This document shows, piece by piece, positions 44,629 through 63,300 of a DNA stretch of 64,000 nucleotides. The position numbers were made by a program, and so were the translations under genes. Positions within the stretch are counted from its first letter, which is position 1. Each line of letters starts with the position of its first letter. The notes under the pieces were generated by a model that was not told the DNA's origin, ran no database searches, and saw only the letters and a program-made list of their open reading frames with translations. Source of the DNA: Guillardia theta CCMP2712 (lineage: Eukaryota > Protista > Cryptophyta); the NCBI RefSeq assembly GCF_000315625.1, contig NW_005434659.1, positions 91,557 to 155,556 of the forward strand, in the 5' to 3' direction.

Positions 44629-45317
44629 GTGCGCTGGATGGAAGCTGTCACTGTCAATCGATTTCTGAGAAGAGACCCTCGGCAATTTCCAACTATTTTG
44701 TCAGATTGCCTGCTTGGTGTCAGAAATCTTCCAATCGAGTTAAGAAAGAAGGTATTTGAATTCTCTATCTGCAACAGTGACCTCCGTGGCGCAAAAATTG
44801 AGGTAAAAAAGTTGGGTGGTCCAGGAGGCGCTCAGATGAATGAGGTGCTCTATACTACCCGAGACACCAACATCCACAACGCGTTCGTTGCATGTATGTG
44901 TGCACAGCTCAATACGGGCGTGGAAAGAAGTGTTTTTCTCGTGGATTATTTCACACTGTATAGAATGCTTCCCAGACGCACCGGTGAAATACCCATGGAT
45001 GCGAAAGAGTGCTTCAAGAACATGTTTTGTGTTTACCTTGCCAAAAGCGCCACATTGAAGTTGCGATTTGGCAGAGATTGGTACGGTCGACAATCAACGA
45101 GAGCGACCAAGAGCCCAATGTCATGGCAGAGGTGGAAATGCTTCGAATGGTCAGCAGGGCAACACGAGCAGAAGACAGACGATACATGGAACAAATGGGA
45201 AACATGCGCCAAAACTTTCCGTTGCAGGAGCCCAACACATTTTCCGCAGAGTACCTCAACATCAACACCATCGTTTCTCGCATGCTTATTTTGCTGCAGA
45301 ACGGGACATTTGCTTGA
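44629..45317 (+). CDS. Orphan protein with an F-box-like N-terminal motif (one predicted intron, about 45031-45074)
   Basis: LGVRNLPIELRKKVFEF resembles the F-box core. A 44-nt GT..CAG intron joins KNMFC to RLVRSTINESDQEPNVMAEVEMLR..LLQNGTFA*. The unspliced ORF would end at 45423. Confidence 0.5.
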
Positions 45318-45354
45318 AAAACCATGCATCTTTATGAAATGCAATAAACTCCCT

Positions 45355-45675
45355 TCAACTCAACAAAATGTCTATGGTATCTATGATCTCATGCAAGCTG
45401 TCCCATTCATCTTTTTGCAATAGCATCATCAGTATGTTTTGACAAGACATCTTCATCCTTTCCAAAAAGGTCTTGACTTCGTATTCTGACATTCCTTTGC
45501 ACAGGGAATCAAAATCCATCAGGCTGTTCTTTATCTGCTGAAAAAAGACCAATACGCGATTGTTGGTATGCTCGTCTGTTCCATACAGAATATGTTGGCG
45601 CAACTCCAAACACCCTACACCCACGTAAACCTCGAGGTCTTTCAGGTTGATGCGATATTGGGCACTCCGTGGCAT
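45355..45675 (-). CDS. Small intronless helical orphan protein (about 106 aa)
   Basis: Uninterrupted ORF with normal globular composition and an amphipathic pattern (RVLVFFQQIKNSLMDFDSL, WDSLHEIIDTIDILLS). Confidence 0.5.
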   Translation of the reverse strand: MPRSAQYRINLKDLEVYVGVGCLELRQHILYGTDEHTNNRVLVFFQQIKNSLMDFDSLCKGMSEYEVKTFLERMKMSCQNILMMLLQKDEWDSLHEIIDTIDILLS

Positions 45676-45729
45676 TTTGCTTCATGTCTGCCCAGACATA
45701 GCATTTATACACACAGGTTCGGGGACAGT

Positions 45730-45875
45730 TGAATTTGGCTAGTAAATTCTCAGATGATTTTCAGCCGATTTTGCATTGAATCTGGCTAGTAATTTTTAGA
45801 TGATTTTCAGCCCGGCGATTTCGCATTGAATCTGGCTTCTTAAAACTTGAAAGGCTGAGTTAAAAACTTGAAATC
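45730..45875. repeat. Degenerate tandem repeat of about 48-51 bp (tgaatYtggctagtaa..agatgattttcagcc..gattt.gcat), about 2.3 copies, plus a duplicated aaaacttgaaa
   Basis: Visible direct repeats in the AT-rich spacer between divergent orphan ORFs. Confidence 0.75.
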
Positions 45876-46224
45876 AGTAAGAGGACAATCATACTACTAC
45901 TGGGCCGCCGCGGGGGATACGGACTTGAGTAAAGAAAAGACTTGAGCACCGTACTGTCAGTATCACTTAGTGACTGATTTTTAACTTAACTTTGAGTAAA
46001 GTGAGCTCAGTACAAAAGTTTCAAAATTGTTTGCAGCATGCCTGCGTGCAGATTACCCCACCCCCCTTCATCCATGACCAAGTCACCCCCACCTCCTCAA
46101 GATCCTGATTTCACCCACCCATTGGTTCCTTTGAAATCAACCCCCTACCCCCTCTGTCTCCCCCCGTCCCAGCCCCTATCCCTTCATAAGGCCAGCCCTT
46201 CGAGGCAGGGAGCATACTCCTACG

Positions 46225-47322
46225 ATGTTGCACATGCGCGTCCTCCCCGTCGCCTCCCAGGTCGCCTCCCTCTTCCCCGTGCCCGACCCGGCCTCTCTTC
46301 CTCCGACATCATCGGTGGCGGTCTCCTCTCCGGCCCTCCTTACCCTGACCACGTTGTCTACCCGGACCCCAGCCGTCCAGACTACGGCTGAGGGAGTGGA
46401 GTCGTTAGATGGACTCCTGAGCGAGGTCGACTATGGCAACAGAGAGACGGAAGCGCTACTTGAAAGCGGCAACTCAAAGGACACGGCTCCCTCCCACCAC
46501 GAGACGCCATTGCAAGCCACTGTCAGTCAAGGGCTGAGCCAGCTCGGCATCCCCGGCGGCTCGGCTACTTGCATGCAAGGGTCCTTCTTCCTGCATCCTG
46601 AGCTGGGCTCAGCCGAGGAGTACATTAACGGGACGAACATTATTCCGACGCCCGAAGAGCTGACGGGGATATCGAGCAACGCTGACGACAGCTTCTTGAA
46701 AGACACTAACTACGTGGAGGACGTGGCTATCCCTTTCCTCCCATCCGGCTATGTCATCATCACCCGGGACACACCAGAGTTCACGTTATTCTATGCTAAC
46801 AAGCCGAAGCTCGAGCATGCCTTCCTCAAAGCTGCTCGTCTCCATGGTGCGAGGCTGGTCTGCTCTGAGATACTCTCGGGCTCCTTCTCGGCCCTGCTCC
46901 CTACCATTTCTGATGAGAGGTGGACTTTATACCAGCGCGCCCACAGCTACTTCAAGCTCGAGCAGCTCTACATTCCCCTCTCCTCTTCCAACGTCCACGA
47001 CTGTCTCAACGATATCATGCGACATGCCAAGACCATCCAGCAAGACAACACCCGCAGGGCTCACAAGCAACCCCGGGAGGACCAGAGCAACCACCTCAGC
47101 AACGCGCTGCAGCAGGCAAGCCTCACAACCGCCAGGGTCAGCTTGCGAGGCGACAGCTACCAAAACGACTACCTGGGGTCCGTCGAGCGCGATCCGACGA
47201 CAGGCAGATCCGAGCTGAGGCTGGTCTTCAACCAGCTGGCCGTGGACAAGTACAAGCAGGTTCAAGAGAAGGCCAAAGTCCGGACGGCGAACGCACGGAA
47301 TCAAAGCGAGAGTAGGCAGTAG
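46225..47322 (+). CDS. Intronless orphan protein (365 aa) with a low-complexity N-terminus and a globular C-terminal half
   Basis: Long ORF with C/G-ending codon bias, preceded by an ACCCC-rich tract (46050-46200). Confidence 0.7.
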   Translation: MLHMRVLPVASQVASLFPVPDPASLPPTSSVAVSSPALLTLTTLSTRTPAVQTTAEGVESLDGLLSEVDYGNRETEALLESGNSKDTAPSHHETPLQATVSQGLSQLGIPGGSATCMQGSFFLHPELGSAEEYINGTNIIPTPEELTGISSNADDSFLKDTNYVEDVAIPFLPSGYVIITRDTPEFTLFYANKPKLEHAFLKAARLHGARLVCSEILSGSFSALLPTISDERWTLYQRAHSYFKLEQLYIPLSSSNVHDCLNDIMRHAKTIQQDNTRRAHKQPREDQSNHLSNALQQASLTTARVSLRGDSYQNDYLGSVERDPTTGRSELRLVFNQLAVDKYKQVQEKAKVRTANARNQSESRQ

Positions 47323-47511
47323 CGCAGACATGGCAGCAAGAAGGTTGATCTCTAGAATGTTCTTCTTTGATTGTTCTATCAGAATACACGTTGAGTAACA
47401 ACCATTAACTGCTGATATCCTCGCGTCTCTCTGATTTCATCTCTTTGCTTCCCAATGCAACTGCGAGTCACATAACAATCTGCAATCGCATGGTGTAAAT
47501 GCCCCATGCAC

Positions 47512-49503
47512 TTAGATTGTAATGGACTCAATCAGATTGCCCTTGCGTTTTGCATCTCGGTAGATATCATGCAGCACATGCACAACTTTCATTGTGCTGG
47601 AACTGCCCAAGATAACAAGTCTTTCTCTTGCACGACTGATTGCGACACAAAGACGGTTTGGGCTCTTGATGAAACCGACTGATTGACTGAAGTTGCAGCG
47701 GACACAGCTGAGAATCACTGTGTCCGCTTCGCTGCCTTGTGCTGAATCCACTGTGACGATGCGAAAGTTGTCAACAAAACATTTTGTCGACTTGTTGTAG
47801 AGACCGGTCATCTCCGCAACATTCAGGAGGCGTGAAAATTGTTCTTTGTAGAAAGTAATGATCATGACGCTGTTAGTCTTGATGTAATTTCGAAAATCTT
47901 GCTCCAACATGGTAGAAGTCAACTCGTCTACTTCATGTTGATTGTACTTGCTCGATTTGCCATCCTCGCCTTGGTTGTGATCACACCATTCCACGCGGCC
48001 GTCCTTGCGATCGATATTGCTCCATGTGACGAGCTTTTTGTTGTAGAACGCCTTTGACACGACATCACAGATGTTTTTGTGCATGCGGTATTGAGTTTTG
48101 AGCATGGGAAAGGTCAGCATCTTTGCAAGCCTGTGGAAGAAGCTGTTTCCATTGCCTGTGTAGCTGAAAGGGGTCAGCTGCTTTTGATCACCAATTGCAA
48201 TGACTGACTCTATCGTATGAGAGACTATCAGTGCTGGCATCTTGAACTCTGGGACAACACCAGCCTCATCGATCACCAAGACACAACGCTTGCCTTGTCG
48301 GATATTCTGAACAGAATCCACAGTGCTCACAAAGATATTCCTTGTTGAAAGGATCTCCTGATAGACTTGGTTGCACGTTTCTTTAAGTTGCTTTCTTTGC
48401 CATAGGACCTGGGCGTGATAACTATGATCTTCGTTTCTGAGAAGGCAATACTTGGAATTGATGTAAAGATCCCATGCCAAGCTCCATTTGCTTGTTGTCT
48501 TGCAGATACTCTTTTTTTGATGAAATCTTTGATGGAGCAGGGTACTTATCTTGTCAAGCCTGTTGAGTTCCTTCAAGCATGAGAGGTATTGCTCGCTTGA
48601 CTCGATGAGGCCGTAGAATGTGTACTTCTTGCAATTTGTGTTTAGCCTCGAGTCATTTCCCACCACGACGAATTTCAGATCAGCGTCTACCGAGAGCTTG
48701 TCAACAATAGACTCCAGCGCCTTGTTCTGCACACATACCACGAGGCAATTCATACCAAGGGGGACGCAACCCTTGACGATGTGGTAGATGGTCGTGGACT
48801 TCCCCGTCCCTGGAGGCCCCTGGATTCCCTCTACGTTGGTCTTCATGTGTTGGATAGCCGCCAGCTGCTCGCCATTGATGGGCACCAGACTTGTGTCGAC
48901 CCTTCCTGCATATTGAAAGATTTGTCTGTTGCTGGAGTTGATCATGGAACTGATCATCCCCGATGGCACAGAATTTCCCTGAATCATGTAGATCCAGTAG
49001 AGATCCATGATGTATGGCTTGAAGTAGCCGACAAGATGTACACTGTTTGAATACTGAAGGTCATCATCGTACCTGGAGAGTTGGATCCCATACTGCAAGA
49101 AGTATCCTTCGCTGTGGCGGCGCAAGAGGCACCAGGAATCGTTGACTAAGAAGATGTTGTTGAGATACTGATCCAGGTCCAGTTGCTGTCCGTCTTTGTC
49201 AAGCAGATCGAGTACTGAATTTTCATCCCGAATCATTTGCATCACCGGCAGCCTTCGGTCCCTCCAGCCAGGAAAAGTATTCTTGAAGGTGTTTTCAAAA
49301 AGAGACCAGATCTCTGCCGAGACATTCTGAGAGCAAGCTTCGAGGTACTGACTCACGTTCATGCGACTGTGAATCTCGACTGTTGAGGTTTTGCAAGGGA
49401 ACAAGATCTTTTTGGTCGCGGATTGCATGACATCAGAGTCGATGTCCCTTTCGACTAGTTCGAGGTCAAGCAAGAAGCGAGCTGAGAAGCATCTTGTAGG
49501 CAT
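47512..49503 (-). CDS. Superfamily-1 Upf1/DNA2/NAM7-like helicase, intronless (about 663 aa)
   Basis: NGEQLAAI (Q motif), IQGPPGTGKST, VQNKALE, VIDEAG, IGDQKQLTP, SFFHRL, LKTQYRMH..I, IITFYKEQ, TVDSAQGSEAD, NRLCVAISRAR. Confidence 0.93.
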   Translation of the reverse strand: MPTRCFSARFLLDLELVERDIDSDVMQSATKKILFPCKTSTVEIHSRMNVSQYLEACSQNVSAEIWSLFENTFKNTFPGWRDRRLPVMQMIRDENSVLDLLDKDGQQLDLDQYLNNIFLVNDSWCLLRRHSEGYFLQYGIQLSRYDDDLQYSNSVHLVGYFKPYIMDLYWIYMIQGNSVPSGMISSMINSSNRQIFQYAGRVDTSLVPINGEQLAAIQHMKTNVEGIQGPPGTGKSTTIYHIVKGCVPLGMNCLVVCVQNKALESIVDKLSVDADLKFVVVGNDSRLNTNCKKYTFYGLIESSEQYLSCLKELNRLDKISTLLHQRFHQKKSICKTTSKWSLAWDLYINSKYCLLRNEDHSYHAQVLWQRKQLKETCNQVYQEILSTRNIFVSTVDSVQNIRQGKRCVLVIDEAGVVPEFKMPALIVSHTIESVIAIGDQKQLTPFSYTGNGNSFFHRLAKMLTFPMLKTQYRMHKNICDVVSKAFYNKKLVTWSNIDRKDGRVEWCDHNQGEDGKSSKYNQHEVDELTSTMLEQDFRNYIKTNSVMIITFYKEQFSRLLNVAEMTGLYNKSTKCFVDNFRIVTVDSAQGSEADTVILSCVRCNFSQSVGFIKSPNRLCVAISRARERLVILGSSSTMKVVHVLHDIYRDAKRKGNLIESITI

Positions 49504-49760
49504 GGCTGCAGGACTGAGCTGGCGGGGGAGACGAGGGAGGAGGTATGGTGGACAACAACACAAGCGCTGCTGTCGATAACCCACCCTACCCTCCATTCTC
49601 AGTGATCCCTCATATCTTGACCGCTAGTAGGCTATGGACCCCTCCAATCCCCCTTTTTCGGTGTACCGACTGTGATGTTCATATAGAAGGCATTCGGTAC
49701 CCCACCCCCCTCCCTGAGATCCTCGCAGAGGATTTGCTCAACCCTCGGCGAAGTGAGACG
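49504..49760. promoter_or_regulatory. Candidate bidirectional promoter between the two helicase genes
   Basis: 257-bp spacer between divergent ATGs, containing ACCC/TACCC tracts like those upstream of other genes in the window. Confidence 0.5.
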
Positions 49761-52700
49761 ATGACAGAATGGGGACGAGGACGAGGAGGACGAGGAGGAC
49801 GAGGAGGACGAGGACGAGGACGAGGAGGAGGAGGAGGAATGCAGGAGGGGGAGGAGGATTCTATGTCTCCCAAGTTGCGATACATGATCACAAGTGACAT
49901 CTCCTTGCGGACCATCCATGAAGCTCGAATCTTCGTTCAAGAGGTTTGTAAACTCGAGGGGGAACATTGGTGTCTTGGACTGCTGACAAATGGGGGAGGA
50001 CGACATCGTCTAGAAGAAATCCTTGATTCAGATAGAATTGTGTGGACGACTGGAATGTCCATGCAGCTTGTTGAGTTTTGCTCTCTGTACGACATCCTGT
50101 TGCCACTGATGAAATGCTGTCAGCGCTTGATCACAAACTTTCCTCATCTCACCCGACAAATTCACACGCTGATGTCCATTTTCAACTCCAAAGACCTCTT
50201 CATGGACAAGCTTGTGGACATGATAACTGATGAAAGTCAGAACATCATGGCTCGTCTCAGCGCTGAAGACATTCATGCGGTAGCCTTCTTCGCAGTCAAG
50301 CTGCTTCGCGTATCGCCTCGAAAAAAGACTTTTGAAAAGTTCCAACAGCTGGTTCAGCAACTTGAGGATCGAGCTTCTCAGCTTACAAACAACTCGAATC
50401 AACATGAGATATTGTTGACACTGAATGCACTGAAGAGTTTGATTGAGCGATACACTCCTGGTGACGCGAGACTGAAGCAGATGCAGAGGTCAAGAGCAGT
50501 AGCTTCATCGCATCTCCTTCCCTACTCCTGGCCTGGTGAGCTCAATGAGACTGGAGCTCGACACAGCAACGACTTCGTTGACATTGCTCAAGTTCGCGTC
50601 ATTCCGACTCTCGATGAGCTGCTGTCCGAGGTCCCTCCCTGCCTCCCGCAGAACAGAGCCGACGCTCCTCACCATCATCCTCCCGAGTCCATCCAGAGGC
50701 TCGTTGACGTTCACTTCCGCTTGTTTCGCCATGATTGCATCGCCAACTTGGCAGAGGTTGTGCGTCATATCGCGGCACACAAAGGAGCAGTCTTCGACTG
50801 GTTCCACAAGCACATGGGGAGCGACAGGCAGAAACTCGATGCAGCGGGCTCGAGCATCCATTCGGTGTTTGTGTTCAGGAACGTGCGATTCCTGCAGACT
50901 GGATGTGACAAGGTCTGCGGAATTGTGTCTACGTATGAGATGGATCAGATTGTGCCCTTGCGGAGAGCATCGCAGAAGGAGATGGAGAAGAAGTGGAAGG
51001 AAGGTGCTATACATGCTCTTCAGAAAGACGACGTAGTCCTCCTATTTCATCTGGGAAAACTACTGGCTGGGCAACTGAACGAGTCGATTCAGTTGGCAAC
51101 TGTGACGTCTCCGTCGCCGACTTCAATAGTCAGCCAGCCCTTCAACAGGTTGCAGGTCAGTCTGAAGTTCCAAGTGACTGATCTTGGAAGTGCAAAACTG
51201 TTTCAGAACCCGTCGGAGGCATATGGGATCATAGATCCAAGACAGGGTTTCTATAGCTTTCAAGAAATCCTAAAAACATTGCAACTGGTGGAAGAAGAAA
51301 CGATCTCACCAGTGTTGAATCAGCTGCAGTTGTCTACCCAACCACTCTTTCCTGGCACTCCAAAGTATCTCAGCAATACTGTCTGGAACTTTCACTGCCT
51401 GATAGAACCAACACGTCTGCAAGAAATGGACGCCATGGACTTGGAGTTTTTGAAGCAAGTGCCGTCAGCAGCATTGGAAGAAGAGAGTTCCAAGAGGGAG
51501 GTCATTCGAAGGCTACAACAAGTGAGCTATCTAGACACTGAGCAGGCTGATGCGGTTGTCAGCTCCTTGCACAGATCTCTGGCCATCACACACGGTCCGC
51601 CTGGTAAGCCTGCAGATCCTGACAAAGTTGACATGACAGCAGCTGACGTGTGCGCAGGAACCGGCAAAACGTTCTTAGGCGTCGCGATCGTGAAGATGCT
51701 GATAGAAAACAAGCGGATTGGACCTAGAAACCCTCTCTTGTGCGTGTGCTACACAAATCATGCTCTAGACCAGTTCCTCGAACACTTGTTAGACGCGTAT
51801 CCTGACCTGAAGATGGTTCGATTTGGGTCACGAACTCAATCTGAACGGCTTTCCGGCTACCTGATGAAGAACATCTGGCAACAAGTGTCTGCACAGCAAC
51901 TTACCGTACAGTCGATGAGATATCAGTTCGGTCACCTGACCAAAATCATCAAGACCTGCGAAAAAGACGTTGAAATGCTCGAAACCTCCAGGGGGAAAAA
52001 AACTCTCTCTTGGAACGAGATAAATCATTTCGTCGAGATAGAATTTCCAAAGATTTACATGCAGCTTGAGATGGCCGAAGATATCATCTTTGGCGACAAT
52101 GACTTCTCTTTTCAGGGCAGGGAGAGCATTCTCGAATTATGGGTCAATCCTCTACCACGAGGGAGAAGTGAGAAGGGACCTTCAGGAGCTCAGGTGTCAA
52201 AGGCTTCAAATCGCTACGAAGCACTCGAGAGCGAAGAAACATCTTCGTTGGACGATGAGGAGAAAGTTGAAGAGATACGCGAGAAAGATGACTATGATTT
52301 ACCAGCGGAGGAATCACGATACTTGTTTCTACCTGAGCAGATGGAAGACTGGTGGCCTGATGGTGACAACCAAGCAGCTGTTGAGGACATTGAGGATATT
52401 TGGAAGCTGTCGTTGGAAGCGAGAAGAAGGTTGAGAGATGTCATTACTGGAATGTTTCAAGAGCACAGAGAGAAGTCTTTGTATGATCTATACAACAAGT
52501 TGAATCAAGCCTATGCAGAAAGGCGACAACTGCAACAATCACAACAAGTCGCGTATCTGAGAAGCTACTGCTCTGTCGTTGGATGTACTGTGTCGGGTCG
52601 CAGCAAGTTCTTTGATGTCATCAACGGTCTTAAAAGTAGCGTTGTGCTGATAGAGGTAGGGCGAGTCTTCAAGCTTCTTGTGCAACTTACTTGTTGTTAC

Positions 52701-55700
52701 ATCTAGGAAGCTGCGGAGATTCTCGAGTCTCAGACTCTTTCCTTGTTCAGTGGCAGCTCCGTACAGCATGCCATCTTGATCGGCGACCATCACCAGCTGA
52801 GGCCTAAGGTGAACTTGTACGAGTTGACATGGCAGTCGAGGAAGGGGTTTGACATTGACCGATCTCTCTTCGAACGTCTCGTCGAGGATCGCAATGCCCC
52901 AACCTCTGTCCTCAGACGTCAATATCGCATGCGGCCGGAGATCTCGAGGCTGATACGAGAGACGATCTACCCCGACCTGCTTGATGGGCAGCGGGTGCTG
53001 CTGTATCCGCCGGTGAAAGGCATGCTGTACCCTGTCTTCTTCTGGCACCACTCGGTCCCTGAAGACAGCTTCCATCCTGGCGACATGAGGTATCAGACGC
53101 AAGAAGGCTCCAAGACAAACTCACATGAAGTCGCCTGCGTCATCGCTCTGGTGACCTACCTCCTCCAACAAGGCTATGCCCGAGATCAAATCACCATCCT
53201 GACGGGCTACCTCGGGCAAAGCGTCTTGATCACCAAGGAGCTGAAGAAACTCTCGTTTTCCGCATTCCTTGGCGAGAAAGACAACAGGGAAGCCAATCTG
53301 CTGCTAGAGGAAGAAGGCCTGTCCGACGACAGCGCCAGCAAGTCTGGCATAAGAGTTGCCACAGTAGACAACTATCAAGGGGAAGAAAATGATCTCTTGA
53401 TATTGAGCCTGGTACGCTCGAACCCGACACAGATGTCAGGGTTCATGAAGGTAGAGAACCGCGTCAACGTCCTTCTCTCTCGAGCGAAGCAAGGCATGTA
53501 CATCATAGGAGACAAGGACACGCTGACTCATCGTGACGCCATGTGGTCAAAGGTTGTCAGCATACTCTCCGAGAGCTCTTGTGTGGGCGACGCGATCCCC
53601 ATCACTTGTCAGCGGCACCCTAAAGACATTCGCTGCTGCAGGGACGTCAAAGACTTCAAGTCGTTCGCTCTCGATGGCGGTTGCATCCTCCCCTGTCCAA
53701 CGCGCTTGAGCTGCGGACATGCCTGCCCCAGGTTGTGCCATCCTGACGGACACGAGGGGTTCCAGTGCCGGCAGCCATGCACGAGAAGGCCGGATCAGTG
53801 TCAGCAGCAGCACCGCTGCAAGAAGCTCTGCTTCCAAGCCTGTGGCAAGTGCTCCGAGCTGATCGAGACCGTCCTGCCATGCGGTCACACCAAGCCCATC
53901 GAGTGCTGGAGGTCAGCTGAGCCCAGCAGGTCCTACTGCGCGGAGAAGGTGACGGTCCTCATGCCAGTGTGCCGCCATGAGGTTCAAGTGCCTTGTAAGT
54001 TGGCTGAGGAGTATGAGGACGGAACGAGACCGTGTCCGGTACCTTGCAGCGGTCAGCTTTCATGCAGCCATCCTTGCACATCTACCTGCGGAGCATGCCT
54101 ACAAGAAGGATGCAAACGAGCTGGGAAAGACTTCCTGACGTCGGTATACCAAGACATCGAGCCGGTCCATCCAGTCGAGTGCCAAGTGAGGTGTCAGCAG
54201 AAGCTGTCAAACCTCTGCGGGCATGTTTGCAACGCTCCTTGTCATCAGTCCAACGGCACCAAGTGCGGCATGTCGTTCTGCCAGGAGCCTTGCGTACTGG
54301 GATGTCAGCACTCCAGCTGTTCGAAGCCTTGCGGCTACTTGTGCCAGCCCTGCATCGAGCTCTGCGACTGGCACTGCGAGCATGCAGGCAGATGCTCTCT
54401 GCTGTGCCTGGCTCCCTGCGATCGCCTGCCATGCAACGAGCGATGCAGCAAGACCCTTAGCTGTGGTCATCGATGCCCGAGCGTGTGCGGGGAGCCGTGC
54501 GAGTACTACGAGAAGTTCTGCCCTCTCTGCGACTCGACGGGGGAGGTGCGGGAGCTTCAGGTTGACCTCATAACGTTCGCGACCCTCGGGGAGGCTGACC
54601 TGGACAAGAATCCTCTCATCTTGTTTCCCTGCCGCCAGCACGTCCTGCAGCTGGAGTCGGCAGACGGGCACATGGAGATCGGGAGGTACTACCTGCAAGA
54701 CGCGGAGGGAGCCTTCACAGGTCTGAGGGAGCTGGAGATCGCCATGAACGACTTCAACAACAAGCTCTGCCCGTTCGGGTGTGGAAGACCGTCAAACGAC
54801 GGCTACCAGATGAAGCGATATGGAAGAGTGGTCAACGCCAGGAACGCTGTGTTGCACCAACAGAAGGTCTTAATACAAACAGAGATCGAAGTAGCGCAAT
54901 GCGAGCAGATGCTGCTGATAGATGAGACTAAAGTCTCCCAATGCTACGACAAGGCAGTCGAGATCCAACAACGACTGGAGGACTACAAGAACAACATCAC
55001 CTTCAACATGAAACATTTCAGCCCCGATTCTCAGCGGGAGACGCGACTCGTCGAGCCTCTTCCAACAGCTCGCGCCAAGGCCATGAACTTGTTGCTGGCA
55101 TGCGCCTGTAGACTGCCAGCGAAATTTCGCGAGCATGATGACGTCAGGTTGCTCAGAAGCAAGGTTGAAACCCTTCTGAATGATCTGATAAGGCTGAAAG
55201 CATTCTCATCCTTCTTGTCCCTCTCTGATCGTCTCATGGAATTTTCCATTCACATTTCTTATGGGACGCTCATTGCCAGTCTCTTTCGAAAGATTCTTCA
55301 GGCCCTTCAGTCAGATGTGGCAGATTCTGTGAGATGGAAGATTCTGTTCCAAGCAATGTGCCTATCAACAAAGTTTGTCCAGGCAAAGAACAACAACGTG
55401 GTTAATCTCCAAGTCCTTGAGGAGATGTCAAGGATTCTAGAAGTGTTCCGCACGTGTATGCAAGCATTTCAACCTGAGCAGGACCTGGTCATGTGGCAGA
55501 GACTGATGCACTCCTTCATCGTTTTCAGACACAACCTTACAAGCAACCAACTTCCGCTCCTAAAGTTGAGCAAAATGCAAGAACTGACATCAACCCTGAG
55601 AGAGTTTGTGCGGGAGACGATGCGAGGACTAGAAAACTCAGACAATCCTGAAGTAGTTAAAGTAGTTCAAGAGGAGCTGAAGCAGCTTGACGACGGTGAG

Positions 55701-56125
55701 TACCTTGTACTTTTACCTCTGCCTCCTGACTGTGTTCCTTGCAGGAATCCCTCTTGAGGTACGTTCTCAGCCTCCATGTCCACCTGTTCCCCAGCAGATT
55801 GACATCTTGCAGACCTTCAGAGAGATCTTCAAGGCGATGGAGTTCCACCCCTCTGACCCAGGGTACAATGGAGGAGGCCACTGGTACTCTTGCCCCAACG
55901 GTAATGGAGCTGCGCTGCTCCTGTGCTCTCAGCTCGTTTCACTGCTCTCACCCTCCTCCTCCAGGTCATCCCTACGTCATTGCTGACTGCGGAGGGGCAA
56001 CGCAGGAGTCTACCTGCTACGAGTGCGGGGCAGCGGTCGGAGGACAGAGTCATCGACTGTTGGAGGACAACAGAGTGATACGCTCGGAGCAAGAGCTCGT
56101 AAACATGTCAAGAGGCGCACGATGA
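49761..56125 (+). CDS. ZNFX1: ZNFX1-like SF1 RNA helicase with an RGG N-terminus, NF-X1 zinc fingers and a C-terminal RZ finger; introns 51604..51657, 52656..52706, 55696..55744, possibly 55759..55797, and 55901..55964
   Basis: PGEL...GARHSNDF.DI....IPT, HFRLFRHD, HGPPG|TGKT, CYTNHALDQFLE, LIE|EAAEILE, IGDHHQLRP, SLFERL, QYRMRPEIS, TVDNYQGEE, NRVNVLLSRAK. Repeated C..LSCGH.C..C.H fingers, KRYGRVVN, and GHWYSCPN|GHPYVIADCGGATQESTCYECGAAVGGQSH. Confidence 0.92.
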
Positions 56126-56543
56126 ATAGACGAGCAGCTAGGAGAAGCTGGTCGTGAGTATAGCATGACAGTAAAACTTCCCGATTCTGCTGCTCTCCGG
56201 ACCTTGACACTGTCGCACGCACGGCCCCGGCCATAGTGTGACGGCGACGGAGGCTGATAAGAGGCAGAGACTGAGAACCAACTCGCCCGGCCGTCGGGCC
56301 CGGATCACCGTCGGGCCCGGACCACTCGGATTCCGAGTTCAGTTGTCAAACTCTCCCTTGGCCATCAAATCCATGGACCCCTACTTTGATTTCTACTACC
56401 CCTGCTTTGAAATGTCATGTGGGATTATACCCCTCCTGTACACACCTGAGGCTAGTTGGATATGGGGTGACCTACGTTTCACACCCGTACATCACCCACC
56501 CCCATCTCATCACCACCCAATATCCCCCCGTAGCGGGGAGGCA

Positions 56544-59500
56544 ATGGCGCGAATGGTTGCGGGCTTGGCGGTGATGGCGGTTATGGCGGCAGCGGCAGGA
56601 GGCGAGGAAAGGAGGATACATCCGTCACTGAGGGTCTGTCCTTCTCCTCTCTTCCCCTCCTACAGCGACTGCAGTCAGGGATATGCTCCGTTAGCGTGCT
56701 CTCCGCCTCCAGACTGGTGTGACATCGATATGGGAAACCCGGTCTTTGTGCAGGGAGAAGGTTACGTGGTGAGGAGAAGTGTTGGCAAGTTCGAGGTGAT
56801 CCTTCGAAGAGTCGGAGGCTTCAAGAATGACCTGAGTGCCCGTGTACATATCAGTTTCGAGAAGGAAATATTTCAAGATGTTGTGTTGGAAGACATATTC
56901 TTTGTTCAGGCGCCTGTGCAGTACAATCGATACATTCCTGCCAAGGCAATGAACGTCAGCGAGAGAAATGTGAGCGGAGAGATTATGTGGTGGCATTGGG
57001 ATGGGCGAGACAAGGTAGTGAGCATCCCTTGGAACAATTCTATCCACGTGGGGATAACTGTTCGCAGCTTTCAAGTATCTTTGTCATACAAGAATATGAC
57101 AGATAGCAGGACATTTCTGATATTGGATGACATCTCAAGCATAGGAATGATTGGGTTTGCTTCTCTGCAGCTCGAGGCCTATGAGGGAGCCTTGTTGCCA
57201 ATCTATCTTGACCGAAGTGGAGGTGCACAGGGAAGTATTCAAGTTTCATTGCAAGTGGACACAACAAGTCCAGGATGCAATTCCACTATCACCAACGACT
57301 TCTCCCTGCTCAATACCACAGTCAGCTGGTCGAATCAAGATCAAGGCAGGAAGACTGTTTTCTTGCTTGTGAGTGACGACGAGTTGGTCTCGCTCTTTCA
57401 AAGGAATTTTTGCATCCTGTTGGCAAACAGCGTCACAGACGGCTATTCCTCTGCAAGCCTGAATGGGTTCTCTCCCATAGACTCCCGGAGGTCCAAACTA
57501 CATGTAACGTTGCTGGACAACGATCTTGTCAGTGAGATCGAGATCTTGACAGAAGAAGGGTTTTCGCCTCTGGACCAGGTCATGGTTCAAGTGAAGCGGA
57601 TTTCAGGGTTCTCGAAGTACATTTCTGGATTTTATGAATTTTACAGCCGAGACGGTCAAAAGTTTCAAAACTCACTGGCATGGGATGTTGGATCAGAAGA
57701 AACCAAACAATTCCTCCTCAATGAATTCCCGGATCTCCCTTCATGCAACTACACCAATTACCAGATTCGAGTGGTCAGCGACAGGCCGCAGTTGTCCCAG
57801 TCGGACCTCTCTTGCTCAGTTGCATTCCATTTGAGGTTCATCACAGGAGCTCTAGTCCGCGGTGGCTCCTGGGCAATTATCTCAGCGAGAGAAAATTGCA
57901 GCATTTCCCTTTCGTCAGCTTCGTATCAGTTGTTCACCAACTCCAAGGCCAGAAAGCTTGAAGTTCAGGTTTGCAGGAACTCCCTTTCATGTTCCATCTC
58001 TGCTTCTCTGCAGACTGCAGATGTCAACTCGACCTACGGCACTCACTACATCCTCTCTTCTCATTCGATCTCATTCGATGCCGGGCAACCACTTTGCTCG
58101 ACCGTCGTCGTTGAGGCGCTCCCAGCAAAGCCTGATTACAAGGGACGGCCGCGAGTTTTCAACCTCTTGCTGTACAAAGATGACGGATTCTTGCCTGAAA
58201 TCGGGATCACACAAGCAGTTGTCGCTATCTCGAATGCCCCTGTCCTTTCTATCTCTCCACAATCAGGAACTTGTCACCTCATTTCCTCTCTTTCCATCAG
58301 TTTCATCTCAGTGGTGACTGGAGACTTCAAGAAAACACTGTCGGCGTCTTGGTCAGCCGAGTTCGTTTCTCCCGACTACATCTCTGGAATCTCTCTTCTG
58401 CCAGCCAGCGGAAATTTCAGTTTGACTTCCCAGGTCAAGACGGCAACTCTTACTTTCAACCTTCTCAACGACGGGTTGTATCACTTTGGACAATACATAC
58501 GACAGATCCGAATGACTATCAGCAGCAAGGACGATGTCTCGTTCCCGGATCCTTTCTTTGACTCCACTACTGTCACACTGGTGAATGATGTCTGTAACCT
58601 GGGAAGGGCAGTCCCCTTGCAAACAGTCTGGGTGTACAACCGTACTTCTGCAAATCCTCAAGTGGTCGTGAATAGAGTTGATGGATATGAAGGAACTCTC
58701 CAGGTGAGGTACAAGGTCGTCGATGGGACGGCGATCAATCATCAGGATTTTCAAGTTGAGGACGGAGTTCTGCTGTGGGATGAGCTTGACACTACATCCA
58801 AGGCGATCAACTTGACTTTCAACGAGGAGATGAAGTTCTCGGCTGGGGCTTGCTACATCAACTTCACTCTCATGTTCTATTCCTTCGACGGCTGCGCCTA
58901 CAGGAATGTCAGTTATCTATCTGCTGAAGTCCGCATCAACAGAGACGATCACCAAGGCCTCGGGATCGTCGGATTCAAGCAGAGCCTGGTCGAGATGTCT
59001 CAGGACGCCTTCTTGTCCCTCAGGGTGGAGAGGACGTGTGGAGATAAGGGGAACACTACTGTGTTCTTCCAGGGGGTGGGCTATGAGATCGGCACCTTGA
59101 GATGGGAGGAAGGGGATGTCAGCGAGAAGAAGATCAGAGTAACGACAGGCACGTCGACGACGTCGATCGCTGCAGCGGACTGGAAGACCACTTGGTCACA
59201 GCAGATGTTCATCTGTGTGGGAGACAGAGATGCGTACTATGAGTATGAGGTGACTCTTACCGAGTCCTACGGCAGTTTCATCGACCCGTCGAGGTCGAAA
59301 GTTCTTGTTCGAGTGTACAAGGAAGGAGACTCGGGGATAATCTCTCTTGCAGCAGCCGACACCTTCGGCTCTCCCCTCCTCCCCTCTCTCCCCTACTTCG
59401 TCATCAACATCTCCCGCTCCTTATCTTTGGGATCCGCGACGGTGAAGTACGTGGCGGGAGGAGGAGGAGGACCGCGGGATTGTGCAAACTTTGTCCCCGT

Positions 59501-60302
59501 GGTAGGCACTAGGCTGTGGAGTGAGAATCAATTCAATGTGCAGGAGGTGAAGATTCCAGTCCAGCAGCCGTTCGTCGTCAACGCCACCAGTTGCAAAGTT
59601 TCGGTTGTATTGCAGAGGATCCATGATGGAACTTCGCTGTCGGCGACCAACTCTGTCGCTGACATCTGGTTCAAGAAGAACGACCTTCGACCTGGGAAGA
59701 TCGTCTTCCAGAGCTCGGCTGTTGAAGTGAAGGAAAGCGATCCTGAAGCCATTCTCTTCGTCAACAGGGTGGATGGGCGAGATGGGAACATCAAAGTGAG
59801 GTACAGGATCGAGAGCGTGTTCTCAGCATGTCAGCAATCTTCCATCACCTATCACTCCACCGTTCAAGACAGCACTAGCGGAACCAACGTGATATGCTCG
59901 CCTGACAACTCGTCGTTCTGCGTCAACTCGAGCTTGTCGGACTCTTGTGTTGCTGGCAGGTGTTCGATACCTGTCAGATCATATTACGAGGATGCCCTGT
60001 CCTACCATCATATCAGGGCTGAGGGAGGACTGCTGGAGTGGCAGGACGGGGAGAGCGAACGAAAGTACATCTCGATTAAGCTCTTCAGCGCTGCAGCTAT
60101 CAACCAGACATACCGTAGAGCCTTCATCGTCAGCCTCTATGACGCCTCCTCCGACGACCCAGCATGCGGTCAGGCGTGCCTGCCGACGTTCGCACAGGAC
60201 GTCTGTGAGTTTGATACCTGGCATCACAATATGAGCAGCAGAGCTGCCGTGTTGATCCGGAAAGAGACAGGTAAAATCCGTTGCTTCACTTCCTCAATTC
60301 CT

Positions 60303-60387
<85 letters not shown>

Positions 60388-63300
60388 CTGTTCCTGTTCC
60401 TGTTCCTGTTTCCTGTCCGTCGTCGTCTTTCTTACTCTTGCTTCTCTCCTATGCCTCTTCCTCTTCATCCTCATTTTCACCTCATCTCTCAACTTGACCC
60501 TCCAGGTGTCGGTTACCTGCAAGTCCTCAGCAGCGCTTTGTTCCTGCCAGAGCAGACAACCAGCTCCGTCTTGTTTACAGTCAGACGGGCAGACGGAAAC
60601 TCCGGGTCATCGACTGTCACCTACCAGACCGTGCCCGACGAACTGCTCAACGGCGTCTCTCCTGCTGTGCCACTTCGAGATTACCTGCCAGTGAACGGTA
60701 AACCGAGATGTTGTTGTAGAGATTGAGCTCTCAAACACTCCATTGAGTGATTTGTAACGATCTGCTTCGTCCTTTGTGATTGTGCTGTTGGCATCATTCT
60801 GCAACCATCTTATGTTTTCTTGAATTCTACCCGTACCAAGGTTTCTCACTTTCATCGCAGGCACCTTGACATGGCAAGAGGGAGACTTCACCGACAAGCT
60901 AGTTCGAGTAGATCTTCTGGGAGACAATGTCTACCGCAAGGGACAACTTCTGAGATCATTCCAACTCTCCTTGGCTTCTCTCTCCAACAAGATTGACCCG
61001 ATGAATGCGAACTCAACCAACATTCTTGTGGAGGATGACGCCAGTCAACCAGGAGAGGTCAGAGCTGAGGTGAGGAGGAGGACAGGGATGCGGCTGGTGG
61101 ACTTCAAGTTTGGCTCGAGAGGGGAGGATCAGAGTTTTATCTGCTGCTGGGATCAGGGGGTCCTTGTCGACCTCACCGCGAGCTTTCAAACTTCTCTTGG
61201 GACCAGCAACCTGGTGGACGTCAGGAGGGGAGCGATCCTCAAGCACCAGTGCGAGTTGCAAGAGTCGACAAGATGCGACGAGCGATCCTCACAGCCTGTC
61301 GCTCTTGCTGACCGCGTCTCTCTCTCCGTCTGGCTGGCCATCGACGACCGAGGGTATCTGCAGAACTGGAACAAAAAGACCCTTGCTGAGCTGACAGAGC
61401 AAGTGAACGGGCCGAATCACACCCGATGGCATCTTTTCCCAACAGGGTTTGAACGAGATGTGTCAAGGTATGTCCCGCTGACGGAGATCTGGGCGGATTC
61501 CGAACGCCTCTGGAACTCAACAGACCTCAAGGGTCGAACTCTTTCTCTCTACCTTGAGATCGAAGGGCTCTTTGTTGATGTCACCTTCCTCGAGCCTCTC
61601 GTCTCCTCGACTGGCAACAAACTTCAGTACTTGCGAACTCTGCCCGCTAGCCTGACGGAGCATGCGGAGAGGTACAAGAACGAACTTGTGCTGGTTGACC
61701 TCAGCGGAGGGACGTGCGATGACATCTCGCCCCATACTTGCATCACTTCGCAAGGTTGTCAACTTGTCAACACAAGGGACTCGCACGTGCTCTGGTCCCT
61801 CCTGCCCTCCCACGCTTCTTTTCCTTCAGATTACGGGCAGTTTGCCAACATCTGCAACGGAGCTTGTCACGCTGCCTGCTTCGTCGGGCGGACAGTGTCA
61901 ATGTTTCTGCAGGACGAGGGAGAGTACTTCGACGTGACGTTCATGACCAACTCATCTACGAGCTACAGCAGGAGACAAGTGCAGATGACTTCCAGGATGA
62001 TGTACACTGCAGCAGAAACGGCCATCTTCCCGACGATGACGTCATAGTCTTCGACGTCCTGCGCAAGAACGGGACCGATGGACCCCTCGTGGTCCACTTT
62101 GACCTAATTGATTCAGCTGGGGACGTGCTGAGGAACGGGACCCTGCTGTGGTTGGAAGGAGAGTCCAGGACACAGTCTGTTGAGTTCTCAGCTGCGAGCT
62201 GCTCGAATCGAGGAGACAGGAACGTGTCGATGCGACTGAGCCAGCCGAGCAGGGTTGACGGAGATAACCTGCGGGCGCTCGAGGTTTTCATTCTGACCCC
62301 GTTTGCTCGCCCTCCTCGTTCCTTGATGGGATGTGAGTTGATGTTGCTGGACAAGGAGAGCCCCGTTGGCGTGTTCATGCTCGATGCCCCTGAGTGTGTG
62401 TCTTCTGCTTCAGCTTTCTTCTTCCAAGCTGAGAGAGCTGGCGTCTCGACCTACCATGTCATCGCCAACTTCTCTCTTTCTTCGCATGATGGAGTCGTTG
62501 GGGCAGGCTGGACTTTCCCTTGGGCCTCCTATGACCAAAAGATCTACATGGCCCCGATTGAGACGTCGCTGTTCGATCATCATCAGCAATTTTACCAGCT
62601 GGAGGCAGGGGTTTCTTCCATCTCATCACAGGGAGAGAATTTGTTGAGGCACAACATGTATCTCTGGAGCTACATCGAATCGTGCTCGTTCACTCCACTC
62701 TTCTTTGCTCTTTATCTTCGCATCACTTCATCTTCTCAGCTGGTTGACCGAAACAGCGTCTTGTCTTTCCAGATTCAACCGTCTCTCAAGGTCCCATCAC
62801 CGTTCTTCTTGGTTGCAAGCTGCTACATCCAATCGGCAAGTCTGCCGCAGCCCTTCCGATCAAACCTCAGCACGTTCGTGTGGGAGGTTGGAACTGAAGA
62901 TTCCAAGAACGTCTCGATCTCAGTCACAACGCTACCGGGTCAACTCTCCCTCTCTCACTTTGACCTGGTCGTCGAGGCTTCGCTGGTCCCATTAACATCA
63001 CAGTGCGACCCATCGTGCCCTTCCTCTGACTACTTCCTCCGCCAGAGCTCTTCCTTCCACGTCCTCCCCGTCACGTCCTTCGGTCTCATCGGCTTCTCTC
63101 CGCAGTCCCTCTACGTCGTCGTCTCGGAGTCGCAAGGGTCTGTCACGCTGCAGGTGCAGCGACAGTTTCCTCACGGCGACAACATGGCGGTGGCATGGTC
63201 GACCATCCCAGGCTCAGCGGTGGGAGATGTCAACTTTGCAAGCAGCTGGGGTATGTCGACGTGGAGCGATGCTGGGAAAGACGTGATAGAGATCAAGGTT

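What the first reader, a model, noticed from the sequence alone, without database searches (positions are those of the whole stretch)
47512..56125. Head-to-head pair of SF1 helicases (ZNFX1-type and Upf1/DNA2-like): candidate RNA-sensing defence module
Seen: two complete superfamily-1 helicases with all canonical motifs are transcribed divergently from a 257-bp spacer (ATGs at 49503 and 49761). They differ in architecture, intron content and the motif II variant (DEAG versus EEAA), so they are not a recent tandem duplicate. Known: ZNFX1 proteins act in antiviral RNA sensing (mammals) and small-RNA silencing (C. elegans ZNFX-1, S. pombe Hrr1), and eukaryotic immune genes often occur as head-to-head co-regulated pairs (e.g. 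plant NLR pairs). Inference: a co-regulated sensor/effector or helicase/helper pair against RNA viruses or transposons in an alga. I know of no description of such a pair.
Basis: partly seen in the sequence, partly recalled or inferred. Interest (0 to 1): 0.8.

Follow-up and report, generated by a model that had tools for sequence, protein, structure and literature searches.

The report
ZNFX1 gene beside a virus-family helicase
Two real but unrelated RNA-helicase-type genes sit head to head in what looks like a cryptophyte alga: an ordinary ZNFX1 orthologue, and a small intronless helicase whose nearest non-cryptophyte relatives lie on giant-virus-like DNA. Nothing yet shows that they work together.

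Summary
An intronless 663-aa SF1B helicase (47512-49503, minus) and a ZNFX1 gene (49761-56125, plus) diverge from a 257-bp spacer. They share only 26% identity over RecA2, so they are not recent duplicates.

Corrections and additions:
- ZNFX1 has four short GT-AG introns, not three. A stop-free 54-bp intron (51604-51657) splits the Walker A motif. The model has 5 exons and 2048 aa, with helicase core, NFX1 fingers and an intact RZ finger.
- The small gene is not Upf1, DNA2 or Sen1. It is a full-length member of an unnamed family of minimal Upf1-like helicases.
- Outside cryptophytes (Hanusia 68%, Guillardia 38%), that family lies mostly on dense, orphan-rich metagenomic contigs. These carry poxvirus-type cap methyltransferase, NUDIX, histone, asparagine synthase and YqaJ genes, so they look like giant viruses.

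The module idea has no support yet. The adjacency recurs only in a 90%-identical relative. The Guillardia paralogue and eight distinct environmental family loci have no ZNFX1 neighbour. Both genes are near-silent in the one RNA run sampled. That fits inducible genes, so it does not refute the idea.

Other first-stage readers noted this same stretch, and noted endogenous giant-virus segments elsewhere in this genome (unchecked).

Verdict: new members of known kinds, and a suggestive but unproven pairing.

The parts
47512..49503 (-). Small intronless SF1B helicase CDS (663 aa, stop included). A minimal Upf1-like core with a family-specific N-terminal region.
   Evidence: ORF and Pfam AAA_11/AAA_12. 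Collinear over its full length with 17 family members. AF2 model pLDDT 85. Foldseek top hits are SETX, IGHMBP2, Sen1, Upf1 and the ZNFX1 core.
48796..48819 (-). Walker A / motif I, GPPGTGKS (aa 229-236), of the small helicase
   Evidence: Invariant columns in alignment A1
48259..48270 (-). Motif II, DEAG (aa 412-415), of the small helicase
   Evidence: Invariant D412 E413 A414 G415 in A1
49504..49760 (.). 257-bp divergent intergenic spacer between the two start codons; a putative bidirectional promoter plus 5' UTRs
   Evidence: Sequence. It is 71% identical with gaps to relative L004, while the coding flanks are about 90% identical. No transcription start sites could be mapped because almost no RNA reads fell here.
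49598..49645 (.). Conserved 48-bp block inside the spacer, 45/48 identical to L004; a candidate core promoter or UTR element
   Evidence: blastn alignment of the spacer to L004
49761..51603 (+). ZNFX1 exon 1: RGG box, N-terminal region, and the start of the helicase up to GPPG of Walker A
   Evidence: ORF. ATG conserved in L004. Donor G|GTAAGC at 51603/51604.
49773..49838 (+). RGG/RG repeat (aa 5-26) at the ZNFX1 N-terminus, encoded by a 9-nt tandem repeat; it differs in L004
   Evidence: Translation, repeat family D1, divergence in L004
51604..51657 (+). Hidden intron 1: 54 bp, GT..AG, in frame and stop-free, splitting Walker A
   Evidence: The Hanusia orthologue reads GPPGTGKT. The window-only 18-aa insert is bounded by GTAAGC...GCGCAG.
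51658..52655 (+). ZNFX1 exon 2: TGKT of Walker A through to the first E of motif II
   Evidence: AAA_11 hit
52656..52706 (+). Intron 2 (51 bp, GT..AG), inside motif II (IE|EAAE)
   Evidence: Sequence and reading frame
52707..55695 (+). ZNFX1 exon 3: motifs II-VI (AAA_12), the Cys-rich NFX1-type finger region and a helical C-terminal region
   Evidence: AAA_12 4.4e-40. PDB 9q9z ZNFX1 9.2e-76. CxH.C finger matches and Cys density.
55696..55744 (+). Intron 3 (49 bp, GTGAGT..TTGCAG)
55745..55900 (+). ZNFX1 exon 4: linker and the first half of the RZ finger (GHWYSCPNG)
55901..55964 (+). Intron 4 (64 bp, GTAATG..CTCCAG), inside the RZ finger
55965..56125 (+). ZNFX1 exon 5: second half of the RZ finger (HPYVIADCGG...GGQSHRL) and the stop codon
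   Evidence: PF20173 3.3e-16. Alignment with animal, fungal and protist RZ fingers. Cys-to-His spacing is 21 residues, as for human C1860/H1881 (numbering from 10.1101/2025.09.05.674436).

Best explanation
These are two independent genes that share a short divergent intergenic region.

(1) The plus-strand gene is the ZNFX1 orthologue (5 exons, 2048 aa). It has an Upf1-like SF1B RNA helicase core, NFX1-type zinc fingers and a C-terminal RZ finger with the catalytic Cys/His pair. By homology it should bind RNA through the helicase and ubiquitinate through the RZ and zinc-finger module. That role belongs to antiviral or small-RNA-linked RNA surveillance. This function is inferred, not shown here.

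(2) The minus-strand gene is an intronless 663-aa 'minimal' Upf1-like helicase made of a 1B barrel, stalk, RecA1, a helical 1C prong and RecA2. It belongs to an unnamed family found in cryptophytes, in at least one other eukaryote-like contig, and above all on giant-virus-like metagenomic contigs. The family has therefore been exchanged between giant viruses and algal hosts. The topology leans towards virus-to-host transfer, but the direction is not settled. The cryptophyte copy is an old, compositionally adapted resident gene under purifying selection. It is most likely a 5'-to-3' ATP-driven RNA or DNA translocase (inferred from the fold).

The head-to-head layout allows co-regulation from one bidirectional promoter. 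On present evidence it is a lineage-specific arrangement, not a conserved two-gene module.
For: ZNFX1 identity:
- Pfam AAA_11, AAA_12 and RZ.
- PDB ZNFX1 9q9z at 9.2e-76 and 1.4e-15.
- Hanusia phi transcript 57% identical over aa 408-2065, then ZNFX1 proteins of algae, fungi and animals at 32-39%.
- RZ finger aligns, with the conserved Cys and His 21 residues apart.

Small helicase family:
- Full-length collinear alignment, including the N-terminal signature.
- The family clade has 100/99 support. The cryptophyte clade (100/99) lies inside it, with virus-context rows on both sides.

Virus-like contexts:
- L006: VP39-type PARP_regulatory (9e-19) and NUDIX.
- L014: PARP_regulatory and PCIF1_WW.
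- L008, L015: histone.
- L009, an IMG/VR contig: asparagine synthase, patatin and YqaJ.
- All are dense and orphan-rich, on parent contigs of up to 204 kb.

Resident and functional:
- GC3 of 0.59 is within the host range.
- No terminal repeats.
- dN/dS of 0.43 against the 90% relative; ZNFX1 gives 0.24.
- 68% identical to a Hanusia transcript with all motifs intact.

No conserved pairing:
- tblastn with ZNFX1 finds no second ZNFX1-like gene in any family locus except L004.
- The G. theta locus has none within 10 kb.
Against: - Two Upf1-like helicases 257 bp apart is not a common chance event. The spacer also keeps a 48-bp conserved block.
- Both genes are equally near-silent in the RNA sample. 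That is what an inducible, co-regulated defence pair would show.
- Both orthologues co-occur in Hanusia phi.
- Synteny was tested in only one other cryptophyte genome, and there only for a paralogue. The G. theta ZNFX1 locus itself was never found.
- The viral nature of the contigs rests on gene content near the helicase. No capsid or polymerase hallmark gene was seen.
Confidence: 0.62

Rival explanations
1. The two helicases form a co-regulated defence module, with ZNFX1 as the sensor and E3 ligase and the small helicase as a helper or effector. They are transcribed from one bidirectional promoter and induced by RNA viruses, giant viruses or transposons.
For: - Divergent layout with a 257-bp spacer and a conserved 48-bp block.
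- Both genes are intact and under purifying selection.
- Both are near-silent together in an unchallenged culture.
- Both orthologues are present in Hanusia.
- Both match the Mokosh MkoA defence helicase profile, at 3e-50 and 3e-43. This reflects the shared SF1B core.
Against: - No conservation of the adjacency beyond a 90%-identical relative.
- The G. theta paralogue stands without ZNFX1.
- Family members on virus-like and eukaryote-like contigs stand alone.
- No expression correlation or interaction data exist.
- The relative's copy carries a 1-nt deletion.
Confidence: 0.2
2. The small helicase is a passenger of an old endogenous giant-virus insertion next to ZNFX1. It would be a decaying or silenced viral remnant without a host function, flanked by orphan intronless ORFs.
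For: - It is intronless, and its closest non-cryptophyte relatives lie on virus-like contigs.
- The neighbouring ORFs 44629-45423 and 46225-47322 have no Pfam or PHROG match.
- There are almost no RNA reads, and 13 probable RNA runs hold none of its words.
- dN/dS of 0.43 is relaxed compared with ZNFX1.
- L004 has a frameshift.
- Other first-stage notes report giant-virus segments elsewhere in this genome (unchecked).
Against: - All helicase motifs are intact, and the protein is 68% identical to a transcribed Hanusia orthologue.
- The cryptophyte clade also includes G. theta, so the gene has been resident a long time.
- GC3 and codon use are host-like.
- There are no viral hallmark genes or terminal repeats nearby.
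- The orphan neighbours have no match in the virus-like loci.
- dN/dS is clearly below 1.
Confidence: 0.15

Closest known systems
ZNFX1 (human ZNFX1, C. elegans ZNFX-1, S. pombe Hrr1 family)
   Same: The plus-strand gene has the same order of parts: N-terminal region, Upf1-like SF1B core with motif II (D/E)EAA, NFX1-type Cys/His fingers, helical region, and a C-terminal RZ finger. The RZ finger has the conserved Cys and His 21 residues apart. The best PDB match is the ZNFX1 helicase core 9q9z.
   Different: It has an RGG repeat at the N-terminus. Pfam PF25396, seen in animal and Mortierella ZNFX1, was not detected. Only 32-39% identity to non-cryptophyte ZNFX1 proteins. The gene is split by four 49-64-bp introns, one inside Walker A and one inside the RZ finger. 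Its function in a cryptophyte is untested.
Upf1-like SF1B helicase cores (SETX/Sen1, IGHMBP2, Upf1, MOV10)
   Same: The small helicase model superposes on the full cores: 1B barrel, stalk, RecA1, 1C insertion and RecA2. TM is about 0.6 and Foldseek E-values are 1e-31 to 1e-24. All motifs are conserved.
   Different: Only about 18% identity to any of them. It has no CH domain, no R3H/AN1 domain, no large HEAT/ARM N-terminus and no SQ tail. It has a family-specific N-terminal signature (YLxKCxQNIxAExW) and a long two-helix 1C prong (aa 304-387).
Unnamed helicase family on giant-virus-like metagenomic contigs (for example P0010, P0030, P0045, P0015, P0004)
   Same: 33-37% identity over more than 90% of the length, the same size (640-720 aa), the same N-terminal domain, and a single well-supported clade.
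   Different: Those copies sit among dense orphan genes, with VP39-like, NUDIX, PCIF1 and histone genes nearby. The window copy sits in host DNA with host-like composition, next to ZNFX1.
Mokosh MkoA (bacterial anti-phage RNA helicase)
   Same: Profile match to the helicase part: 3e-50 for the small helicase and 3e-43 for ZNFX1.
   Different: The match covers only the shared SF1B core. There is no PLD nuclease partner and the organism is not bacterial. This is a resemblance of the core, not membership.

Membership tests
ZNFX1 | Upf1-like SF1B helicase core (AAA_11 + AAA_12) with a complete motif set | tested here: met
   AAA_11 1.3e-09 and AAA_12 4.4e-40. Walker A is restored to GPPGTGKT by removing the 54-bp intron. 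EEAA, GDHHQL and TVDNYQGEE are present.
ZNFX1 | NFX1-type Cys/His zinc fingers downstream of the helicase | tested here: met
   One strict and five loose CxH.C...C matches at aa 1301-1559 of the 2066-aa read-through model, with 5-11 Cys per 50 aa. The PDB ZNFX1 match extends into this region. No Pfam zf-NF-X1 hit was reported.
ZNFX1 | C-terminal RZ finger with the transthiolation Cys and the general-base His | tested here: met
   PF20173 3.3e-16. Aligned with seven RZ fingers. Cys of DCGG and His of GGQSH are conserved and 21 residues apart, as for human C1860/H1881. Activity not tested.
ZNFX1 | Closest relatives are ZNFX1 proteins rather than other SF1B helicases | tested here: met
   Named hits are NFX1-type zinc-finger-containing protein 1 or RZ-type proteins. 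Best PDB hit is 9q9z.
Upf1 (NMD helicase) | N-terminal Cys/His-rich CH domain that binds Upf2 | tested here: not met
   The N-terminal 200 aa of the small helicase are a helix plus a beta-barrel without Cys/His clusters. The PDB sequence match to Upf1 covers aa 382-659 only.
DNA2 | N-terminal PD-(D/E)XK nuclease with an Fe-S cluster, fused to the helicase | tested here: not met
   No nuclease domain in Pfam or NCBIfam. At 663 aa the protein is too short. DNA2 ranks only 24th by fold, with a TM normalised to the target of about 0.35.
Sen1/SETX | Large N-terminal HEAT/ARM domain and the Sen1-specific brace | tested here: not met
   There is no N-terminal extension. SETX is the top fold hit for the core only, at 19% identity.
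Giant-virus-associated minimal Upf1-like helicase family (unnamed) | Collinear over the full length (about 640-720 aa), with the conserved N-terminal signature and the EGIQGPPGTGKS / IDEAG / GDQ.QL motifs | tested here: met
   Alignment A1: invariant E64, W66, G139, G159, N210, Q213 and all motifs. Family clade support is 99 and 100/99.
Endogenous giant-virus element (GEVE) | Neighbouring viral hallmark genes, a compositional shift, or element boundaries | tested here: not met
   No viral Pfam or PHROG hits in the flanking ORFs. Host-like GC3. No terminal repeats.
Conserved two-gene defence module | Adjacency kept across divergent genomes | tested here: not met
   Kept only in the 90%-identical L004. 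Absent at the G. theta paralogue and at every other family locus held. The G. theta and Hanusia ZNFX1 loci themselves could not be examined.
Conserved two-gene defence module | Co-expression or induction | tested here: inconclusive
   About 1 read on the helicase and about 3 on ZNFX1 exons 1-3, from 6% of one RNA run. Probable RNA runs hold 0.00-0.01 of the words.

The most novel reading that the evidence does not exclude
Cryptophytes captured a helicase from giant viruses and placed it under the same bidirectional promoter as ZNFX1. This would form an inducible two-helicase unit against giant-virus or RNA-virus infection. For example, the virus-derived helicase could recognise viral transcripts or replication intermediates and hand them to the ZNFX1 helicase and E3 ligase.
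Probability: 0.08. Interest if true: 0.75.

Novelty: new member of a known kind. Interest (0 to 1): 0.3.

Why it matters
- ZNFX1 is an emerging innate-immunity helicase and E3 ligase in animals. A complete orthologue with an intact RZ finger, apparently in a cryptophyte, adds to the evidence that this architecture is ancient.
- The small helicase defines an uncharacterised family shared by giant-virus-like genomes and algae. It is a marker of virus-host gene exchange and a candidate viral RNA-metabolism enzyme.
- If the two genes were shown to be co-induced and to interact, this would be a rare example of a eukaryotic two-gene antiviral unit built partly from a viral gene. At present that is only a possibility.

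Tried and rejected
- Recent tandem duplication: rejected. The two share only 26% identity, over RecA2 alone.
- Upf1, DNA2 or Sen1 membership for the small helicase: rejected, because the accessory domains are absent.
- Recent mobile or viral insertion: no terminal repeats, host-like GC3, no viral domains in the neighbours, and the orphan neighbours have no match in the virus-like loci.
- Finding the window's own record: the exact 694-aa ORF is not on record.
- Finding more relatives for synteny: the metagenome scan with cryptophyte-specific peptides returned only distant bacterial helicases. These are L019-L023, four of them on human-gut metagenome contigs. They are bacterial, not human DNA, and I did not analyse them further.
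- IMG/VR gave only 3 loci.
- No G. theta ZNFX1 appeared within the length limits of the word search.
- ESM Atlas gave only generic SF1 clusters.
- BFVD gave nidovirus helicases and one distant Sylvanvirus protein, with no close named giant-virus homologue.
- Cluster look-ups gave no names.
- Mapping transcription starts and confirming introns with reads failed for lack of reads.
- The claims here do not rest on an absence of relatives.
Full report
**Observation**

The region holds two superfamily-1B helicase genes on opposite strands. The minus-strand ORF 47512-49596 carries AAA_11 and AAA_12 and every SF1 motif. Its start codon is best placed at 49503, giving 663 aa. The Hanusia orthologue begins at the same point. 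In L004, a metagenomic relative about 90% identical in DNA, similarity and frame collapse immediately upstream of that ATG.

The plus-strand gene starts at 49761, and that ATG is conserved in L004. The spacer is only 71% identical to L004 and has gaps, but it keeps a 48-bp block (49598-49645) with 45 of 48 positions identical.

The two proteins share 26% identity over RecA2 only, and nothing elsewhere. They are not recent duplicates. Motif II is DEAG in one and EEAA in the other, as stated.

**ZNFX1 gene model**

Three GT-AG introns were evident: 52656-52706, 55696-55744 and 55901-55964. A motif scan then showed no intact Walker A. The reading was GPPG, then 18 residues, then TGKT.

The DNA there reads G|GTAAGC...GCGCAG|GA, which is a 54-bp, in-frame, stop-free intron at 51604-51657. 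The Hanusia phi transcript reads GPPGTGKT without interruption.

The final model has five exons: 49761-51603, 51658-52655, 52707-55695, 55745-55900 and 55965-56125. It encodes 2048 aa. No RNA read confirmed any splice, because almost none mapped.

**ZNFX1 identity**

- Pfam finds AAA_11, AAA_12 and the RZ finger.
- The best solved structure by sequence is the ZNFX1 helicase core 9q9z, at 9.2e-76 for exon 3 and 1.4e-15 for the read-through of exons 1-2.
- The closest named protein is a Hanusia phi transcript, 57% identical over aa 408-2065. Next come ZNFX1 or RZ-type proteins of Closterium, fungi and animals at 32-39%.
- A Cys-rich stretch with one strict and five loose CxH.C...C finger matches follows the helicase.
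- The RZ finger aligns with animal, fungal and protist examples. The Cys of DCGG and the His of GGQSH are 21 residues apart. That matches human C1860 and H1881, described as the transthiolation cysteine and general base (10.1101/2025.09.05.674436).
- An RGG repeat (aa 5-26) opens the protein, and it is variable in L004.

This is an ordinary, complete ZNFX1 orthologue.

**The small helicase**

By sequence it matches Upf1 (9e-25), SETX, IGHMBP2, ZNFX1 and Sen1, over the C-terminal half only.

An AlphaFold2 model built on an 18-sequence alignment has pLDDT 85. It shows a beta-barrel (aa 87-159), a stalk helix, RecA1, a long two-helix insertion (aa 304-387) and RecA2. Foldseek places it on the full cores of SETX, IGHMBP2, Sen1, Upf1 and ZNFX1, at about 18% identity.

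It lacks the Upf1 CH domain, the DNA2 nuclease and the Sen1 N-terminal domain. It is therefore a minimal Upf1-like helicase, not a member of those families.

**Its family**

The word search gave an 89% relative (metagenome), Hanusia phi at 68% and G. theta GUITHDRAFT_120150 at 38-39%. Below these came dozens of unnamed proteins of 640-720 aa, 33-37% identical over more than 90% of the length. They are collinear with the window protein, including an N-terminal signature.

The contigs that carry them are dense, on both strands, and mostly made of orphan genes:

| Locus | Parent contig | Neighbouring genes |
|---|---|---|
| L006/L007 | 103 kb | poxvirus VP39-type PARP_regulatory (9e-19), NUDIX |
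| L014 | 30 kb | PARP_regulatory; PCIF1_WW directly upstream |
| L008 | 129 kb | histone H3-like, glycosyltransferases |
| L015/L016 | 23 kb / 17 kb | histone |
| L009 | IMG/VR contig | asparagine synthase, patatin, YqaJ |
| L017 | 23 kb | PARP |
| L001 | 205 kb, 61% GC | no Pfam hits on record |
| L013 | 30 kb | no Pfam hits on record |

I read these as giant viruses (Nucleocytoviricota-like). No capsid or polymerase gene was seen in the stretches held.

One basal subgroup (P0065, locus L018) sits among peptidase M16, cyanate lyase and Myb genes, and looks cellular and eukaryotic.

**Trees**

A 98-row quick tree and a 35-row careful tree (LG+C20) agree:

- The family is one clade (99, and 100/99).
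- The four cryptophyte rows are one clade inside it (99, and 100/99).
- The cryptophyte clade is sister to P0005 and P0033 (84 in the quick tree; 85/76 in the careful tree).
- Together these are sister to the main virus-context clade (92; 94/88).
- The virus-context P0063 branches first (98/96).

Virus-context rows thus lie on both sides of the cryptophytes. This shows gene exchange between giant viruses and algae. It leans towards virus-to-host transfer but does not prove it. BFVD holds no close named giant-virus homologue, so the viruses are uncultivated lineages.

**Is the window copy a live host gene?**

- GC3 is 0.59, within the 0.53-0.77 range of the neighbouring host genes.
- No terminal repeats bound it.
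- The flanking ORFs have no viral domains and no homologues in the virus-like loci.
- Against L004, dN/dS is 0.43 for the helicase and 0.24 for the ZNFX1 N-terminus.
- L004 carries a 1-nt deletion at CDS position 1677. It appears in both assemblies of one run, so it may be real or an error.
- Conservation with a Hanusia transcript at 68%, with all motifs intact, argues for function.

**Is it a module?**

The adjacency recurs only in L004, which is too close to be informative. The G. theta family member has no ZNFX1 within 10 kb. tblastn with ZNFX1 finds nothing beside the helicase in any other family locus. Both orthologues do occur in the Hanusia transcriptome, which shows co-occurrence only.

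Expression data are thin. In the one raw RNA run of the species, 6% of the run was read. About one read fell on the helicase and about three on ZNFX1 exons 1-3. A ChIP DNA run covered the stretch evenly at about 10x. Thirteen probable RNA runs hold 0.00-0.01 of the words.

Joint silence fits either inducible co-regulated genes or simply two lowly expressed genes.

**Organism**

Both genes have Hanusia phi as their nearest named relative, and the helicase clade includes Guillardia. This supports a cryptophyte origin. Freshwater and lake metagenomes hold parts of the stretch.

**Verdict**

The ZNFX1 call is right. The second helicase is reassigned to a giant-virus-associated family. The defence-module reading is possible but unsupported.

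Other first-stage notes on this genome describe the same stretch, giant-virus segments elsewhere, and a MOV10/HELZ-ZNFX1 fusion elsewhere. I used them as leads only.

Noticed in passing
window 51604-51657: A 54-bp, in-frame, stop-free GT..AG intron splits the Walker A motif of ZNFX1 (GPPG|TGKT). ORF-based reading hides it. Other short stop-free introns may be hidden in genes of this genome.
   Followed up: yes
L014 4976-8173 and 14793-15626; L006 17325-20363: On two virus-like contigs from different subclades, the family helicase lies near mRNA-cap enzymes. PCIF1_WW is 94 bp upstream, and VP39-type methyltransferase and NUDIX lie within 5-8 kb. This hints at a role in viral mRNA metabolism.
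   Followed up: partly
L004 near 2876 (window CDS position 1677, about window 47827): The 90%-identical environmental relative has a 1-nt deletion in the small helicase, before motif V. It appears in both assemblies of the same run, so it could be real or a sequencing error. dN/dS downstream of it is unchanged (0.39).
   Followed up: partly
window 49773-49838: A 9-nt tandem repeat encodes an RGG/RG box at the ZNFX1 N-terminus. Its sequence differs in the close relative. P0121, the homologous protein called on another metagenome contig, starts at the internal Met at 49863 (aa 35), so the true start is uncertain.
   Followed up: partly
window 47200-47399: This is the only RNA-seq pile in the 6 kb examined (depth 1.8, all first mates on the + strand). 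It lies over the 3' end of the orphan ORF 46225-47322 and in the convergent gap before the helicase stop codon. A loose end sits at 47247. The transcript's strand and identity are unresolved.
   Followed up: no
window 44629-47322: Two intronless ORFs (264 and 365 aa) have no Pfam or PHROG match and no homologue in the virus-like loci. Their GC3 values are 0.48 and 0.76, so they are heterogeneous in composition.
   Followed up: partly
window 56238-60497: A long ORF of 1419 aa with a Calx-beta domain begins 113 bp after the ZNFX1 stop codon. It ends in an (RV)n/(PV)n dinucleotide-repeat-encoded tail.
   Followed up: no
L018 3381-5411: A basal member of the helicase family sits on a contig with peptidase M16 (split, probably by an intron), cyanate lyase and a Myb gene. 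This looks like a second, unidentified eukaryotic host lineage of the family.
   Followed up: partly
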